From IMG/VR virus record IMGVR_UViG_3300028275_000006, positions 1 to 64,000 of that record: a DNA stretch of 64,000 bases. One strand, written 5' to 3'. The notes beneath the pieces were generated by a model that was not told where the DNA came from, did no database searches, and worked only from the letters and a program-made list of their open reading frames with translations. Positions 55,278 to 60,780 of the stretch are shown in pieces. The position numbers and the translations under genes were made by a program. Every line of letters starts with the position of its first letter. Position 1 is the first letter of the stretch.

Positions 55278-55306
55278 ATTATATATGTTTATTTGATCAG
55301 AGTCAA
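55278..55306 (-). promoter_or_regulatory. sigma70-type promoter for the dsbA-polymerase operon
   Basis: TTGACT-N17-TATAAT. Confidence 0.85.
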
Positions 55307-55326: not shown

Positions 55327-55352
55327 AAAAAAAGCGGCCGAAGCCGCTTTTT
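55327..55352 (-). terminator. rho-independent terminator, probably bidirectional
   Basis: GCGGC-TTCG-GCCGC followed by T7 on minus and T5 on plus. Confidence 0.9.
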
Positions 55353-55365
55353 AAGTGTTAGTATT

Positions 55366-57144
55366 TTACTTTGCTGGAGCCGCAGGTGCTGCCGCAGGAG
55401 CCGCAGGTTGTTGTCCGCCTGCTGCCTTAGCCTTTTTAAGTTTGTCTAACTTGGAAATTACAACATCTAGACGTTTTTGGACATCTGCTGGTAAGCCTGC
55501 TTTGATTGCAGGATCTTGTCCATATTGATCTAGAACTTTCAAATGCTTCTGTAGTTCTGCTAGATCTTTTGGATCCATTTCAATGTCACCGCCGCTAAAT
55601 GCTTTCCATAGTGCGCCTAGTGCCAATGCCCCACCAACAGCGGCAGTTGCAATAGCCGCTTTTGGATTCTTTAGTACACCAAGTGCCTTTGATCCTGCGC
55701 CTTTGACAAAGTCCATGGCACGTTGTCCCCAACTTGGTTTTGGAGTAATGTCTCTGAATGGAACATCGATGACGTTTGGATTAGCACCACCTGGTGTAGA
55801 TAGTGCCGGTAGTTTGCCGCCAGGACCAGGTAGTGCTGGCACAGGTGCTTCACTTAGATAATCTCTTGTAATAGCAATTTGTTCTGCTTCGCTAAAGTAT
55901 TTGATATTTTTCATAACAAACGCTCTTGCTTCGTTTTCAGTCATTGCTAATACATCTTCTTCAGTTACACTTTCAGAAATTTTGTACTTAGTAACGATTG
56001 CTTCGATAGCAGTTAATGATTGTGTTAACTGACTACGTGCAACGATATTTTTACCGTCTGCCAATAGTGTAGATAGTTCAGGAGTAACTTTACCAGTTTC
56101 TGGTTTGCCTGCCATCTTTTCAAATGCTTTAATACCAGCAACAGTTTTAGGACCCATCTTACCATCGATTGGACCAGGGTCAACACCTAATGCTTTTAGT
56201 TGTTCTTGAATTTTCTGAATTGCAGGATCTGCACCAGCAGTCTTCTTATCTTGTGCAGTCTTATCTTGTGCAGTCTTGTCTTGAGATGCTTTAGTATCAG
56301 CGGCAACTTTATCTGCTTCTGCACTTGCGGCATCTAAGTCTTTATCCATCTTTGCATCGTATTTTGCTTTTTCGGCTGCTTCAACATCTGCAACAGTTTT
56401 CTTAGCATCATCGATTGCTTTACGTACTTCTGGATCATCTCCTAAAGTTTCTAATTCGTCAATTAACGCATTAATTTGATCTGCCACTGCCTTGGCTTCT
56501 GGACTTAGTTGCTCTTGCATTGGTACATCACCAACTACGTCTTGGAATTCTCTCATCAATGATTCAAAGATACTTCCTTCACCAACTTTTAATCCACCAA
56601 GTTTTGGAGCATTAGCAGTCATGCCTGGCATCTTAAGTCCAGTTCCGCTACTTGCTGTTCCGGTATCTGATCCACCAGTAATAGATTGTAACTTTTTAAC
56701 CAAGTCCGCTAATTGCGGAAGTTTTTCTGCTTTAATTTCGGCAGTCTGGCGATCTTTATTAACTTTGTCACTAGTACCTTTAACTGCGGTATCGTGTTCG
56801 CCTTTGTCGTCGCCACGGAACATACGTCCTAGTGCTGTAGATGTTTTTGCGTTTTGTGGAACTAAACCTAGATCTGCAAGTGTTTTATCTGCGCTTGATG
56901 TTGCAGTTGCGGCAATACTGTATTTGCCACCCATGCTGTTTGGCTGTCCTTGCTTGCCAACAAAGTAACCGCTAACAGGATCATACAAACCTGGTAGTTT
57001 GTGTTTCCATGCTAGGTCATTAAGGATCTCTGCACGTTCTTGCTCGTCTGATTTACCAGCAACTGCGGCTTCAACGTCTTTGATTGTGATAGCCTCTGCA
57101 AGTACTACAGTATCCAATTTGTTTAGAATTGATCTAATATCCAT
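55366..57144 (-). CDS. putative head-internal/ejection protein with a peptidoglycan-binding domain
   Basis: IQEQLKALG..PGPIDGKMGPKTVAGIKAF (PG_binding_1 pattern); leader MDIRSILNKLD..LAE; late promoter upstream. Confidence 0.65.
   Translation of the reverse strand: MDIRSILNKLDTVVLAEAITIKDVEAAVAGKSDEQERAEILNDLAWKHKLPGLYDPVSGYFVGKQGQPNSMGGKYSIAATATSSADKTLADLGLVPQNAKTSTALGRMFRGDDKGEHDTAVKGTSDKVNKDRQTAEIKAEKLPQLADLVKKLQSITGGSDTGTASSGTGLKMPGMTANAPKLGGLKVGEGSIFESLMREFQDVVGDVPMQEQLSPEAKAVADQINALIDELETLGDDPEVRKAIDDAKKTVADVEAAEKAKYDAKMDKDLDAASAEADKVAADTKASQDKTAQDKTAQDKKTAGADPAIQKIQEQLKALGVDPGPIDGKMGPKTVAGIKAFEKMAGKPETGKVTPELSTLLADGKNIVARSQLTQSLTAIEAIVTKYKISESVTEEDVLAMTENEARAFVMKNIKYFSEAEQIAITRDYLSEAPVPALPGPGGKLPALSTPGGANPNVIDVPFRDITPKPSWGQRAMDFVKGAGSKALGVLKNPKAAIATAAVGGALALGALWKAFSGGDIEMDPKDLAELQKHLKVLDQYGQDPAIKAGLPADVQKRLDVVISKLDKLKKAKAAGGQQPAAPAAAPAAPAK
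56245..56289. repeat. 15-bp tandem repeat encoding QDKTA
   Basis: CTTATCTTGTGCAGT twice plus one degenerate copy. Confidence 0.8.
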
Positions 57145-57170
57145 TTGTTTGTCCCCAAAATCTTATTAAG

Positions 57171-57178
57171 TATTTATC
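57171..57178 (-). promoter_or_regulatory. late promoter GATAAATA
   Basis: 26 nt upstream of the start at 57144. Confidence 0.65.
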
Positions 57179-57180
57179 AG

Positions 57181-57266
57181 TGCTCACTTTAAATCGTCAG
57201 GGTAGCGAATCCGTTGATTAGCCCAGCAGCCGGGCACATAACCCCAAACGGTCCTAGGGTATGTTC
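57181..57266 (-). ncRNA. candidate pseudoknotted structured RNA
   Basis: GC-rich non-coding island; three stems plus a loop CCGUU/AACGG pseudoknot. Confidence 0.5.
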
Positions 57267-57365
57267 TTACAATTCATAAGGAATTCCGGCTAATCCGCAT
57301 CCAAAGCGAGCTAACCCTTCTACAATGTCATTAAACAGGGCTGTAAGGGTTTCTCGGACGGTCAT
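57267..57365 (-). CDS. small ORF, 32 aa (MTVRETLTALFNDIVEGLARFGCGLAGIPYEL)
   Basis: GAGGA SD 8 nt upstream; below the ORF-track cutoff. Confidence 0.45.
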   Translation of the reverse strand: MTVRETLTALFNDIVEGLARFGCGLAGIPYEL

Positions 57366-57405
57366 AGCCATCTTCCTCTGGGTAAACTGGATATTCGTTT
57401 TCCAT
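57331..57405 (-). CDS. small ORF, 24 aa (MENEYPVYPEEDGYDRPRNPYSPV)
   Basis: Start overlaps the dps stop codon (TAATG). Confidence 0.4.
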   Translation of the reverse strand: MENEYPVYPEEDGYDRPRNPYSPV

Positions 57406-57839
57406 TATTTTAGAGTTGCTCGCAACATCCATGAATGTTTGCGATGAGCATCTTGACGATCTGCTAGGAAATTAGCAAGACCAAATTCATTGTTTGTTTC
57501 TGCAATTTTGTACACTAGGCCAAATAAGTTAGCCATTTTATCAGAGTCTTCTAATAAAATTTGTGTCATAGATAGTGCATCTGGAATCTCTGTTTCATCA
57601 TCAATTTTAGTAAGCATAGTGAAACGTTCAAAACTACCAGGAGTGTAACTACCACTCTTGCGAATATTTTCTGCAAAAGTATCTATACTTCCATATACTT
57701 CTTCGTAGATGTTACCAAATAGTTCATGAAATTCTGCAAAATCAGGTCCTTCTACGTTCCAGTGAAAGTAGTGTGCCTTTAGATAAAAACTAAATTCTGA
57801 TGCGAATACTATTTTAAGTGCTTTTGCTAATTCTTCCAT
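57405..57839 (-). CDS. dps: Dps / ferritin-like protein
   Basis: AHYFHWNVEGPDFAEFHELF...DTFAENIR; HRKHSWML. Confidence 0.93.
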   Translation of the reverse strand: MEELAKALKIVFASEFSFYLKAHYFHWNVEGPDFAEFHELFGNIYEEVYGSIDTFAENIRKSGSYTPGSFERFTMLTKIDDETEIPDALSMTQILLEDSDKMANLFGLVYKIAETNNEFGLANFLADRQDAHRKHSWMLRATLK

Positions 57840-58073
57840 TTATGCCACCTGTGCTACTGCGTATACGGCTGTGACTAACATAGTTTTTAAATTTATGTCG
57901 TCTGCCTCTTCTTCTAATTTATCTGTTCTGACTAGGTCTAGCATTAATTCTCTAAACTCGTCTTCGCCTATTTGTCCTTGCTGACGTGCTTCACATATCT
58001 GCAATGCCACTGCGGCACGTTCAGCCGCCCATGGGCGACCACATTGTGTTAACATCTGCAACTGTTCTATCAT
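57840..58073 (-). CDS. hypothetical protein
   Basis: 77 aa, coupled to the lipoprotein gene. Confidence 0.6.
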   Translation of the reverse strand: MIEQLQMLTQCGRPWAAERAAVALQICEARQQGQIGEDEFRELMLDLVRTDKLEEEADDINLKTMLVTAVYAVAQVA

Positions 58074-58459
58074 TAGAATCTCCCAAGAACTGCACTAGCG
58101 GCTTTATCCGCTTGTGTAGCCATTAATTTCTTTTTAATTTCGCAGTAAGTTTCGCTACCCTGCTTTTCTGTACTGCGTTTATAAAAGTCATCTACAGTTT
58201 CCTGCATAGGTTTAACTAACTTAAGAACGTCCTGTTGACGCCAACCTTTGCTTTCACTATAAAGTTGAAACCATTCTAAATTATCTTTGATAATTTTAAC
58301 CTGTGGTGCGTGTGCTTGTTTACAATCTAATTGTGCTACACTTTGACGCACGTCTATAATACGTGCTGATTGATTAGGATCGCTGAAACTAGGAATCCAA
58401 CTCTTAACAGTAGCGCAACCTGTTAATGATATTGCTAATGCTAAGACAAGGGCTCTCAT
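58073..58459 (-). CDS. putative lipoprotein
   Basis: Lipobox LTGC after the hydrophobic leader MRALVLALAIS. Confidence 0.7.
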   Translation of the reverse strand: MRALVLALAISLTGCATVKSWIPSFSDPNQSARIIDVRQSVAQLDCKQAHAPQVKIIKDNLEWFQLYSESKGWRQQDVLKLVKPMQETVDDFYKRSTEKQGSETYCEIKKKLMATQADKAASAVLGRF

Positions 58460-59331
58460 TTTCCATCCTTGACACAGTTATCAACAGTCTTACCGCCTTT
58501 CTGTTTGGTACCCATACGTTTGTAACCATCCCAGCAAGCCTTACCATCGACACCTTTTTGCTTTTCTTCTGCTAATGTAAGGTAGTCTAAGAAAGATTTT
58601 TTAGTTTCCATAGTTGCTGGTTGTTGCTGTTGTACTACGTGTGTGGCAGCACCGTCAGGAACAGATGCTGTATTAGTTACATTCTTGTTAGCATCTTGTT
58701 GACGTCTAACTTTTGCAACACCTAAATCGTATTCGGCATCACTGGCACCTGTTTCCTTGCCAGTTTTGTCATAGGTCTTAACAACATTTAATGGACCGTT
58801 CATATACTTTACAGTAATATTGCCAGTGACTAAATCGTGTTCCTGACTATAGCCGTTAAACATTGGACTAGAATATTTGATTGCTTTACCTGCTTTGTCG
58901 TAGGTAAATGAACCAAACCCGCTATCGTGTACTCTAGTACCGTCTTGCTTTACTGTAAGTTTCTCACCGCCTTCTAAATCGTAACGACCTGGTTTAGAAA
59001 AATCGCCCTGTGGAAATGCAGGAGCATTTGGAATTTGTAGATTGGGTTTAAAACCCGGCTCCCCAGGTCTGCCTGCTTCTTCTAGATCGCTGTCTTCTTT
59101 TTTATTTGCAGTTTTAATATTATACATCTTAGCCACTGCTTTTTCATCATACGGTCTAAAGTCGCTGAGTTTTTCTTTTGCGGCATCAGCGGCAGACGCA
59201 ACTTTGTCAGCAACTGTTTTTAATGTATTGTTTTCCTGCACAATAGACACGAAACGGCGCATGTCATTTGCGCCTTCTACTCTACGACTAGATGCTTTAT
59301 CTAGTGCTTGTAAAATTTGTTTCATGTCCAT
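58456..59331 (-). CDS. putative head-internal protein
   Basis: Leader MDMKQILQALD; Glu-delimited segments; C-terminal CWDGYKRMGT..GGKTVDNCVK module. Confidence 0.55.
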   Translation of the reverse strand: MDMKQILQALDKASSRRVEGANDMRRFVSIVQENNTLKTVADKVASAADAAKEKLSDFRPYDEKAVAKMYNIKTANKKEDSDLEEAGRPGEPGFKPNLQIPNAPAFPQGDFSKPGRYDLEGGEKLTVKQDGTRVHDSGFGSFTYDKAGKAIKYSSPMFNGYSQEHDLVTGNITVKYMNGPLNVVKTYDKTGKETGASDAEYDLGVAKVRRQQDANKNVTNTASVPDGAATHVVQQQQPATMETKKSFLDYLTLAEEKQKGVDGKACWDGYKRMGTKQKGGKTVDNCVKDGK

Positions 59332-60772: not shown

Positions 60773-60780
60773 TATTTATC
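60773..60780 (-). promoter_or_regulatory. late promoter GATAAATA
   Basis: 21 nt upstream of the start at 60751. Confidence 0.65.

What the first reader, a model, noticed from the sequence alone, without database searches (positions are those of the whole stretch)
57181..57266. Candidate multi-pseudoknot RNA between dps and a late gene
Seen on the minus strand: P1 ACAUACCCU/GGGGUUAUGU (one bulge) with loop AGGACCGUUU; P2 GCCCGG/CUGGGC; downstream AACGG pairs with loop CCGUU (pseudoknot); P3 UUCGCU/AGUGAG, whose loop ACCCU could pair with the AGG of the P1 loop. It is a GC-rich non-coding island ending exactly at the late promoter (57178). I cannot assign it to a known family. It could be a ribozyme, a riboswitch-like element or an mRNA-processing signal.
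Basis: partly seen in the sequence, partly recalled or inferred. Interest (0 to 1): 0.68.

Follow-up and report, generated by a model that had tools for sequence, protein, structure and literature searches.

The report
Phage pseudoknot RNA antisense to rRNA
A small folded RNA, present about once per genome in many uncultured giant freshwater phages, carries loops that are exact reverse complements of some of the most conserved stretches of bacterial ribosomal RNA, which points to a so far undescribed way for a virus to address the host ribosome.

Summary
Window 57266-57181 (minus strand) belongs to an RNA family of at least 157 distinct sequences in IMG/VR phage contigs. It has no Rfam match and was not found in the bacterial loci or cultured phages I tested. 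There is about one copy per 200-350 kb genome.

Covariation supports hairpins P1, P2 and P3/P3b, an optional P1a, and an H-type pseudoknot between the P2 loop and the invariant 3' tail AAAGUGAGC.

The new finding is that the conserved loops are antisense to ribosomal RNA:
- The P1 loop is the exact reverse complement of E. coli 23S 1920-1930 (window copy: 1918-1927), the 3' strand of helix 69 plus linker.
- The P3 loop complements 23S 1929-1937. Alternative loop types complement 1964-1979.
- The P2 loop complements 16S 519-527.

The 23S target was invariant in nearly all bacteria sampled.

Best explanation (inferred, confidence about 0.5): a pseudoknot scaffold presents antisense loops that base-pair with host rRNA. 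What that pairing achieves is unknown. A ribozyme, a riboswitch or a transcript-end role is not excluded.

The parts
57178..57269 (-). Full extent of the covariance-model match (the RNA element with short flanks)
   Evidence: R1: 54.5 bits, E 1.5e-12. R2: 74.4 bits, E 8e-17. It is the only hit in the 212-kb record.
57267..57269 (-). UAA stop codon of the conserved 34-aa upstream ORF (57371-57270), directly abutting the element
   Evidence: In 119 of 124 homologues the upstream ORF stops 6-17 nt before the P1-loop motif or at the UAG inside that loop.
57256..57264 (-). P1, 5' strand (ACAUACCCU)
   Evidence: All pairs checked. The P1 pairs have changes on both sides in homologues.
57246..57255 (-). 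P1 loop L1 (AGGACCGUUU). Family consensus CCUUAGGACC, more than 86-97% conserved per position.
   Evidence: consensus; variants.
57247..57256 (-). Antisense block 1: UAGGACCGUU is the exact reverse complement of E. coli 23S rRNA 1918-1927 (helix 69 loop end and 3' strand, plus linker)
57236..57245 (-). P1, 3' strand (GGGGUUAUGU, U26 bulged)
57232..57235 (-). P2, 5' strand (GCCC)
   Evidence: Compensatory GC/CG/AU changes in homologues.
57225..57231 (-). P2 loop L2 (GGCUGCU). Positions 2-7 form the 5' strand of the pseudoknot.
   Evidence: L2 variants change together with the 3' tail.
57223..57232 (-). Antisense block 2: CGGCUGCUGG is the exact reverse complement of E. coli 16S rRNA 518-527 (530 loop)
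   Evidence: This is weaker evidence than for the 23S blocks: 19 of 157 variants break the match while keeping the pseudoknot.
57221..57224 (-). P2, 3' strand (GGGC)
57192..57219 (-). P3 domain: outer helix AAUC/GAUU, internal loop, inner helix GG/CC, loop AUUCGCUA
   Evidence: All six P3/P3b pairs have changes on both sides.
57201..57209 (-). Antisense block 3: UUCGCUACC is the exact reverse complement of E. coli 23S rRNA 1929-1937
57182..57190 (-). Invariant 3' tail AAAGUGAGC. AGU(G)AGC (57188-57182) is the 3' strand of the pseudoknot, with G82 (57185) bulged.
57171..57178 (-). T4-type late-promoter-like GATAAATA of the downstream 592-aa gene. It is not part of the RNA.
   Evidence: Metatranscriptome contigs over the late gene end at 57175, 57150 and 57151.

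Best explanation
The element is one member of a previously undescribed, phage-specific family of structured RNAs, 67-117 nt long, present about once per genome.

Shown:
- The fold is three consecutive hairpins (P1, P2, P3/P3b, with an optional extra hairpin P1a inside the P1 loop).
- These are locked by an H-type pseudoknot in which the 7-nt P2 loop pairs with the invariant 3' tail.
- P3 sits in the third loop of that pseudoknot, and an AAA run precedes its 3' strand.

Also shown:
- The nearly invariant hairpin loops are Watson-Crick antisense to universally conserved rRNA.
- The P1 loop complements 23S 1917-1933, the 3' strand of helix 69 plus the linker.
- The P3 loop complements 23S 1929-1937. 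In alternative loop types it complements 1964-1969 or 1966-1979, the other side of the same local rRNA fold.
- The P2 loop complements 16S 519-527.

Inferred:
- The pseudoknot scaffold holds P1 and P3 side by side, so that their loops can pair with adjacent stretches of host 23S rRNA.
- This most plausibly happens while domain IV is unfolded or undocked, as in nascent rRNA, late pre-50S particles or free 50S.
- The RNA is therefore ribosome-directed. It could be a trap for rRNA folding or subunit joining, a tether of ribosomal particles to the phage transcript, or a guide for an unknown enzyme.
- It is made as the 3' end of an operon, directly after a stop codon. In this phage that operon starts at a late-type promoter.
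For: Family and structure:
- 157 distinct homologues.
- 93.8-95.2% of cells paired against 64-68% in shuffles (0/500 shuffles as high) and 29-49% with slid partners.

Pseudoknot:
- C3-G8 swaps to G3-C8.
- G5.U5 changes to A5-U5.
- An A5 loop comes with tails GUAGC, GUGGC or GGUAGC.
- A U5 loop comes with tails in which G4 and U5 are free to vary.

Copy number and range:
- One strong copy in each of 6 records of 212-353 kb.
- None of 80 pattern-matching bacterial loci passes the model, against 93 of 100 viral loci.
- Absent from four cultured relatives.

rRNA antisense:
- Exact matches to a real E. coli 23S sequence at 1921-1930, 1929-1937 and 1968-1976.
- The longest antisense match of the 5' domain is 10-17 nt in 143 of 157 instances. 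It lies only in 23S 1905-1935 in 142 of 157, against 0 of 157 after shuffling.
- The longest match of the P3 domain lies only in 1920-1980 in 86 of 157, against 5 of 157 after shuffling.
- Different P3-loop types, and different windows within one type (1966-1976 against 1971-1979), are each complementary to the rRNA. This argues for selection on pairing rather than shared ancestry.
- The commonest L1 variant, GGGCC, keeps pairing through a G.U wobble.
- The 22-27-nt target is identical in all sampled Pseudomonadota and in Bacillota, Bacteroidota, Cyanobacteriota, Chloroflexota, Rhodothermales and Acidimicrobiales.
- Hybridisation with a 23S 1900-1985 fragment gains -15 to -26 kcal/mol after unfolding both partners, against -6 to -7 +/- 3 for shuffled elements.
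- G.U pairs fix the strand as the gene-sense one.
Against: - No experiment or read-level data shows an RNA-rRNA duplex.
- The target bases are paired or buried in mature 70S ribosomes, so pairing needs unfolded rRNA or strand invasion.
- Duplex energies of the loops alone are no better than those of shuffled loops somewhere on a 2.9-kb 23S.
- A 9-nt hairpin loop cannot pair along its whole length without opening P1.
- The two loops bind in 'crossed' order, so they are not a simple interrupted antisense.
- The targets of the P1 and P3 loops overlap by 2-5 nt in many instances.
- The B-type P3 loop matches only 6 nt.
- 19 of 157 instances have P2-loop variants that break the 16S match.
- One copy at an operon end seems too little RNA to titrate all ribosomes.
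- In this phage the RNA appears to be made late, when blocking ribosome assembly would gain little.
- Homologues are related, so the counts are not independent events.
Confidence: 0.5

Rival explanations
1. It is a small-molecule-binding or self-cleaving RNA (a new riboswitch or ribozyme class). The rRNA complementarity is incidental, or a relic of an ancestral capture of antisense rDNA.
For: - A compact H-type pseudoknot with an embedded hairpin and an A-rich strand has the same topology as the preQ1-II aptamer.
- Invariant bases sit in loops and junctions while the stems covary, as in ribozymes and aptamers.
- In some lineages the P1 loop plus P1a are collinear with antisense helix 69 (22 of 25 nt in one homologue), which would fit an origin by capture.
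- One metatranscriptome contig ends inside the P1 loop, at 57254.
Against: - No Rfam ribozyme or riboswitch model matches, even at E<=10.
- The element follows a stop codon, and in half the cases precedes a recognisable promoter. That is not a 5'-UTR position.
- Independent P3-loop types complementary to different nearby rRNA segments are hard to explain by ancestry alone.
- The contig end is seen in one run only, and contigs cannot show RNA ends.
Confidence: 0.17
2. It is a cis-acting transcript-end element. The pseudoknotted structure would stabilise the 3' end of the upstream operon, insulate it from the next promoter, or mark an RNase processing site.
For: - It always has the same orientation as the flanking genes.
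- It directly follows a stop codon.
- A late- or sigma70-type promoter motif follows within about 40-70 nt in 78 of 156 cases.
- Contig depth drops across the element in 3 of 4 metatranscriptomes.
Against: - There are only one or two copies per 200-350 kb genome, although such genomes have many operon ends.
- There is no U-tract, and the terminator scan reports no terminator-like site here. The phage uses a classical terminator 1.8 kb downstream.
- A stabiliser would not need about 28 invariant loop and tail bases, nor rRNA complementarity.
Confidence: 0.15
3. It is a guide or trans-acting catalytic RNA. The two loops would clamp 23S rRNA on either side of G1929/G1930, so that a phage enzyme, or the RNA core itself, modifies or cuts the rRNA with turnover.
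For: - It has bipartite antisense elements of 8-12 nt to adjacent target stretches, as in snoRNA-type guides and the EBS1/EBS2 loops of group II introns.
- It has a strongly conserved pseudoknot core.
- A catalytic mode would solve the stoichiometry problem of a single-copy gene.
Against: - C-box UGAUGA occurs in 0 of 157 instances, and there is no conserved ACA near the 3' end.
- No protein gene is consistently linked: there are 36 upstream and 38 downstream gene clusters.
- The alternative P3-loop types bind about 35-45 nt away from the P1-loop site, so no single nucleotide is framed in all members.
Confidence: 0.1
4. It is a DNA-level element, for example a single-strand initiation or primase site, or a mimic of a mobile-element target. 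The 23S 1917-1951 region is a known hot spot for intron and retroelement insertion.
For: - It is single-copy and lies 2.5 kb from the DNA polymerase gene.
- The invariant GGCTGCTG contains primase-like GCT/CTG triplets (recalled from memory, not tested).
Against: - Frequent G.U pairs, a covarying pseudoknot and strict co-orientation with transcription fit an RNA.
- No endonuclease, reverse transcriptase or recombinase gene is consistently adjacent.
Confidence: 0.03

Closest known systems
preQ1-II riboswitch aptamer (Rfam RF01054)
   Same: The topology is the same: a dispensable 5' hairpin, then an H-type pseudoknot whose third loop carries an embedded hairpin, with an A-rich strand before the 3' pseudoknot strand.
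   Different: There is no model match. The position is not a 5' UTR, and the pseudoknot does not hold a Shine-Dalgarno sequence. The hairpin loops here are rRNA-antisense, which the aptamer's are not.
Box C/D and H/ACA guide RNAs of archaea and eukaryotes
   Same: A structured scaffold presents two antisense elements of about 9-12 nt to highly conserved rRNA. Helix 69 and its surroundings are a classic target region (from memory).
   Different: There are no C/D boxes (0 of 157 with UGAUGA) and no H/ACA box. No partner protein genes are linked. No such guides are known in bacteria or phages (from memory). The loops bind in crossed order, not collinear order.
EBS1/EBS2 loops of group II introns
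   Same: Two loops of one folded RNA pair with adjacent target segments in the same 5'-to-3' order as the loops.
   Different: There are no intron domains, no domain V, no reverse transcriptase and no exon context. The element is only 67-117 nt.
Ribosome-binding 3' elements of eukaryotic RNA viruses (the tRNA-shaped 3' element of Turnip crinkle virus, and the calicivirus TURBS motif that pairs with 18S rRNA)
   Same: These are a 3'-UTR or intercistronic element made of hairpins and pseudoknots that contacts a ribosomal subunit, and an mRNA motif near a stop codon that base-pairs with rRNA.
   Different: They are eukaryotic systems. TURBS targets the small subunit, and the tRNA-shaped element binds by shape. 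No prokaryotic or phage counterpart targeting 23S rRNA turned up in my literature searches.
Bacterial antisense RNAs that use two kissing loops (for example OxyS with fhlA)
   Same: Exposed hairpin loops act as independent antisense seeds on one target.
   Different: Those targets are mRNAs. There is no pseudoknot scaffold and no such extreme conservation across distant genomes.

Membership tests
Any Rfam 15 family | Covariance-model match at the gathering score, or at least at E<=10 | tested here: not met
   No match in the 64-kb window, in 701 nt around the element at E<=10, or in six homologous loci at E<=1.
preQ1-II riboswitch | H-type pseudoknot with a hairpin embedded in loop 3 | tested here: met
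   The P2-loop/tail pseudoknot with P3 in between is supported by covariation.
preQ1-II riboswitch | Sequence/structure model RF01054; 5'-UTR position with the ribosome-binding site inside the pseudoknot | tested here: not met
   No Rfam hit. The element follows a stop codon, and in this window is followed by a promoter-like motif.
Intrinsic terminator | G+C-rich hairpin immediately followed by a U-tract | tested here: not met
   The terminator scan reports none at 57181-57266. The 3' flank in this window is ACUGAUAAAUAC.
tRNA / tmRNA | Cloverleaf or tRNA-like domain detectable by ARAGORN | tested here: not met
   No genes in the window. None at the element in 34 homologous loci.
Small self-cleaving ribozymes (hammerhead, twister, twister-sister, pistol, hatchet, HDV-like, hairpin) | Match to the family's conserved core and fold | tested here: not met
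   These families are in Rfam, and there are no hits even at permissive thresholds.
Small self-cleaving ribozymes (a new class) | Site-specific self-cleavage | not testable with these tools
   This needs an in vitro transcription and cleavage assay. The only hint is one contig end at 57254, which is not evidence.
Box C/D guide RNA | C box RUGAUGA and D box CUGA forming a kink-turn | tested here: not met
   UGAUGA is in 0 of 157 instances. CUGA is in 40 of 157 and not at a fixed place.
Box C/D or H/ACA guide RNA | Antisense element(s) of about 9-12 nt to conserved rRNA | tested here: met
   There are exact antisense matches of 10-17 nt (P1 loop) and 8-11 nt (P3 loop) to 23S 1917-1937 and 1964-1979.
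Trans-acting base-pairing RNA (kissing-loop antisense) | Complementary bases exposed in loops of a stable fold | tested here: met
   The antisense blocks coincide with the loops of P1, P2 and P3 in the covariation-supported structure.
Trans-acting base-pairing RNA (kissing-loop antisense) | Demonstrated duplex with the target in vivo or in vitro | not testable with these tools
   Only thermodynamic estimates are available: a gain of -15 to -26 kcal/mol with a 23S fragment, against -6 to -7 for shuffles.

The most novel reading that the evidence does not exclude
The RNA is a phage-encoded, rRNA-targeting guide or trans-acting ribozyme. The P1 and P3 loops would clamp host 23S rRNA at the helix 69/helix 70 junction, and the P2 loop the 16S 530 loop. 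The conserved pseudoknot core, alone or with a phage protein, would then cut, modify or remodel the ribosome catalytically. This would be the first RNA-guided attack on, or reprogramming of, ribosomes by a bacterial virus.
Probability: 0.12. Interest if true: 0.97.

Novelty: categorically new. Interest (0 to 1): 0.86.

Why it matters
- **A new RNA family.** If the loops really pair with rRNA, this would be the first family of viral RNAs in the prokaryotic world that addresses the ribosome through its RNA rather than through proteins or mRNA signals. It does so at helix 69/70 of 23S and the 530 loop of 16S, functional centres that are almost invariant in bacteria.
- **A possible explanation for the conservation.** The loops stay identical in phages whose proteins are only 45-65% identical. 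An invariant target would account for that.
- **Directly testable.** The 80-nt RNA can be tested in E. coli, because the target sequence is the same there.
- **Useful even if the rRNA reading is wrong.** The family is a new, widespread, single-copy pseudoknotted RNA of uncultured jumbo phages. Its structural model is well supported, and it is a good candidate for ribozyme or ligand screens.
- **A caution for annotation.** Antisense matches to rRNA in phage contigs should not be dismissed as contamination.

Tried and rejected
- **Single-sequence folding.** It gave no signal (z = -0.57).
- **DNA and protein searches in cultured phages.** They found no homologous locus. The covariance model found nothing in Phosso, Atu_ph07, S-SRM01 or PBECO4.
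- **MAFFT alignments.** They mis-registered P1. I therefore seeded the model from one length class with a hand-set structure and let Infernal realign the rest.
- **RNAalifold on the seed.** It preferred a long-range CAC/GUG closure. I rejected it because local P1 covaries in lineages without CAC.
Rejected for lack of covariation.
- **tRNA/tmRNA.** Rejected.
- **Intrinsic terminator.** Rejected.
- **C/D guide.** Rejected.
- **Link to a flanking gene family.** Rejected because the neighbours are diverse.
- **Bacterial genome scan.** It gave only chance pattern hits.
- **A target inside the phage genome.** Not found.
- **7-mer antisense histograms.** Uninformative because of chance hits, so I replaced them with longest-match and shuffle tests.
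- **Duplex energy of the isolated loops.** Not better than shuffles.
- **Host-specific covariation of P1-loop variants with helix 69.** This failed because the target is invariant in all phyla sampled except Mycobacterium.
- **Metatranscriptome contigs.** They show that the region is present in RNA libraries but cannot give RNA ends.
- **Literature searches.** Searches for the sequence strings and for phage RNAs complementary to 23S rRNA found nothing relevant.

Full report
**What is at the site**

On the minus strand the dps-like ferritin gene (57839-57405; Pfam Ferritin, E 3e-20) is followed by two mini-ORFs. The second is a 34-aa ORF (57371-57270) that is conserved in nine related loci. It ends with UAA at 57269-57267.

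The 86 nt from 57266 to 57181 are non-coding and 51% G+C, against about 40% around them. They are followed after 3 nt by GATAAATA (57178-57171). This is one of only three such T4-type late-promoter motifs on that strand in the whole 64-kb window. Another sits at 60780, in front of the operon that ends with the element.

The next gene (57144-55366, 592 aa) carries a peptidoglycan-binding domain. It is followed by a classical terminator and a sigma70-type promoter.

The record is a 212-kb fragment of an uncultured phage with a T4-type family-B polymerase. Its nearest cultured relatives are the jumbo phages Phosso, at 50% polymerase identity, and Atu_ph07, at 47%.

The sequence alone does not fold better than shuffled versions (z = -0.57), and Rfam finds nothing even at E<=10. 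The picture changes with homologues.

- Loci fetched only through the neighbouring Dps protein contained a conserved core of about 58 nt at about 80% identity, in phages whose Dps is only 60-70% identical.
- A covariance model accepted 93 of 100 such viral loci, 49 of the 90 loci searched in the Dps/late-gene set and 13 further variants.
- None of 80 bacterial loci that matched the same pattern by chance was accepted.
- In total I collected 157 distinct sequences of 67-117 nt.

**Structure**

On the unbiased alignment 95.2% of cells form standard pairs, against 64.2% in shuffles (0/500 as high) and 31-43% with slid partners. Of 22 pairs, 17 show changes on both sides.

- The helices are P1, an optional P1a inserted in the P1 loop, P2, and P3 with an inner helix P3b.
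Cells paired are 74.3% against 74.5%, and the covariation score is 0.067 against 0.065.

**The pseudoknot**

The 7-nt P2 loop (G1 G2 C3 U4 G5 C6 U7) and the invariant tail (A1 A2 A3 G4 U5 G6 A7 G8 C9) change together in rare variants.

- GGGUGCU comes with GUGACC, so C3-G8 becomes G3-C8.
- GGCUACU comes with the standard tail, so G5.U5 becomes A5-U5.
- GGCUACU also comes with GUAGC, GUGGC or GUGUAGC.
- GGCUACCU comes with GGUAGC.
- GGCUUCU comes with tails in which G4 and U5 are replaced by A, C or U, while GAGC stays.

The model is G2-C9, C3-G8, U4-A7, G6 bulged, G5.U5, C6-G4 and U7-A3. With this pseudoknot included, 93.8% of cells pair, against 67.8% in shuffles. This is a classical H-type pseudoknot. 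P3 is inserted in its third loop, and an AAA run lies where such knots usually make minor-groove triples. That last point is an inference from the known architecture of H-type pseudoknots.

**Genomic behaviour**

- There is one strong copy in the 212-kb record and in each of five other records of 278-353 kb. A complete 353-kb genome has a second, P1-less copy.
- All 49 copies found in the Dps/late-gene loci lie on the strand to which those loci were oriented, the strand of the gene used to fetch them.
- Flanking genes are diverse, with 36 upstream and 38 downstream clusters. A T4 DsbA-like 86-aa gene is the most frequent downstream neighbour.
- In 119 of 124 cases the upstream ORF stops 6-17 nt before the P1-loop motif, or at the UAG inside that loop.
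- About half the copies are followed within 40-70 nt by a recognisable late or sigma70-type promoter motif.
- No tRNA genes are associated.
- River metatranscriptomes contain the region. Contigs over the late gene end at 57175, 57150 and 57151, which fits the late promoter. The element itself is a gap or at low depth in three of four runs. These are contigs, not reads, so nothing can be said about RNA ends.

**The unexpected property**

The invariant loops reminded me of 23S rRNA, so I fetched a real one, E. coli rrlH.

- The P1-loop consensus CCUUAGGACC is the exact reverse complement of 23S 1921-1930. This is the 3' strand of the helix 69 stem plus the linker.
- The commonest P3 loop, UUCGCUACC, is the reverse complement of 1929-1937.
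- A second loop type, ACGCCAUUC, is the reverse complement of 1968-1976.
- A third loop type contains UCGUGC, the reverse complement of 1964-1969.
- The helix names come from the established E. coli secondary structure. The 1906-1924 hairpin can be read directly from the sequence.

Across the 157 instances:

- The longest exact antisense match of the 5' domain to the whole 23S is 10-17 nt in 143.
- That match lies only in 1905-1935 in 142, against 0 after shuffling.
- The longest match of the P3 domain lies only in 1920-1980 in 86, against 5 after shuffling.
- 117 instances have two or more separate matches of at least 7 nt inside 1900-1985.
- Reversed-sequence controls reach only 8-10 nt, at scattered places.

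The boundaries slide from lineage to lineage (1917-1930, 1918-1927 in this window, 1919-1933, 1966-1976, 1971-1979), yet they stay complementary. The commonest P1-loop variant replaces an A-U pair by G.U. In some lineages P1a is nearly collinear with antisense helix 69.

The 22-27-nt target is identical in every sampled genome of seven phyla or orders. Mycobacterium differs at two bases. This would explain why the loops do not vary, and it means the host cannot be inferred from them.

Cofolding with a 23S 1900-1985 fragment is favourable after unfolding both partners: -15 to -26 kcal/mol, against -6 to -7 +/- 3 for shuffled elements. The isolated loops, however, bind no better than shuffled loops do somewhere on a 2.9-kb rRNA.

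A later check showed that the P2 loop with its closing pair (CGGCUGCUG) is the exact reverse complement of 16S 519-527, in the 530 loop. The tail that pairs with this loop resembles 16S 520-525. That match is less secure: 19 of 157 instances carry loop variants that keep the pseudoknot and break the 16S match.

Taking the three loop matches together, chance is very unlikely. By my estimate the probability is of the order of 1e-6, taking 9- and 10-mers against 4.6 kb of rRNA.

**How it probably works**

Shown:
- the family;
- its fold;
- its single-copy, phage-restricted distribution in the collections I searched;
- the strand;
- the exact complementarity of its loops to rRNA.

Inferred:
- P1, P2 and the pseudoknot helix can stack, with P3 leaving sideways, so the P1 and P3 loops lie near each other. 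The scaffold would thus present them to adjacent rRNA stretches. The 5' loop binds the 5' target part, as EBS2/EBS1 do in group II introns.
- The target bases are paired or buried in mature 70S ribosomes. The likely partner is therefore unfolded or undocked domain IV, as in nascent 23S, late pre-50S or free 50S.
- The outcome could be a trap for folding or subunit joining, a tether of ribosomal particles to the phage transcript, or guidance of an enzyme. I cannot choose among these.
- Two facts argue against simple titration of ribosomes: the single-copy gene and its apparently late expression in this phage.

I put about 0.5 on 'acts by pairing with rRNA'. The rest is divided among a new ribozyme or riboswitch, a transcript-end element, a guide or catalytic variant, and a DNA-level element.

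**Comparison with known systems**

In topology it resembles the preQ1-II aptamer. In logic it resembles snoRNA-type guides, group II EBS loops, two-loop antisense RNAs, and the ribosome-binding 3' elements of some eukaryotic RNA viruses. It fails the defining tests for membership in each of these. The membership table gives the details.

Full-text searches found no description of such an RNA, and Rfam 15 has no model for it.

**Verdict**

It is a new family and, to the extent I could check, a new kind of phage RNA. Its function remains to be shown experimentally.

Noticed in passing
window 57223-57232 (-): The P2 loop with its closing pair is the exact reverse complement of 16S rRNA 518-527 (530 loop). 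The pseudoknot tail that masks it resembles the 16S target itself, which would allow a self-masked antisense switch. However, 19 of 157 homologues break this match while keeping the pseudoknot.
   Followed up: partly
window 60773-60780 and 57171-57178 (-): Only three NATAAATA late-promoter-like motifs lie on the minus strand of the 64-kb window. Two of them bracket the unit that ends with the RNA. This unit is a putative late operon: a 471-aa DUF3008 protein, ORFs of 291, 128 and 77 aa, Dps, and two mini-ORFs.
   Followed up: partly
window 55329-55352 and 55278-55306 (-): A strong intrinsic terminator (10-bp stem plus T-run) lies directly after the 592-aa gene. It is followed by a near-consensus sigma70 promoter (TTGACT-17-TATAAT), upstream of the small ORFs that precede the DNA polymerase.
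   Followed up: no
window 55366-57144 (-) and related loci: The 592-aa late protein (PG_binding_1 domain) and many neighbours in related phages begin with similar N-termini (MDIRSILNKLD, MDLRKLLDKLE, MRAKEFITE). These recall the capsid-targeting sequence of T4 internal proteins (from memory). They may be packaged and ejected proteins.
   Followed up: no
window 57405-57839 (-): A Dps/ferritin-like gene is widespread in this uncultured phage group: at least 595 IMG/VR stretches at 60-100% identity. Among cultured phages, the nearest match by far is Synechococcus phage S-SRM01, at 35% identity.
   Followed up: partly
window 57270-57371 and 57334-57405 (-): Two mini-ORFs lie between dps and the RNA. 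The 34-aa one is conserved in nine loci. The 24-aa one starts in the TAATG overlap with the dps stop codon. Neither has a family match.
   Followed up: partly
L049:3878-4135 and 26 other related loci: An 86-aa T4 DsbA-like transcription-regulator gene, with its own sigma70 or MotA-box-like promoter, is the most frequent gene directly downstream of the RNA in relatives.
   Followed up: partly
G001:C1:76953-77019 (locus L470): A complete 353-kb relative carries a second, divergent copy of the RNA. It lacks P1 and its loop but keeps P2, the pseudoknot tail and a P3 loop of the common type.
   Followed up: partly
window 56000-58500: The phage region is present in 24 riverine metatranscriptome runs. 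Depth over the late gene is about twice that over the dps operon in three of the four runs laid.
   Followed up: partly
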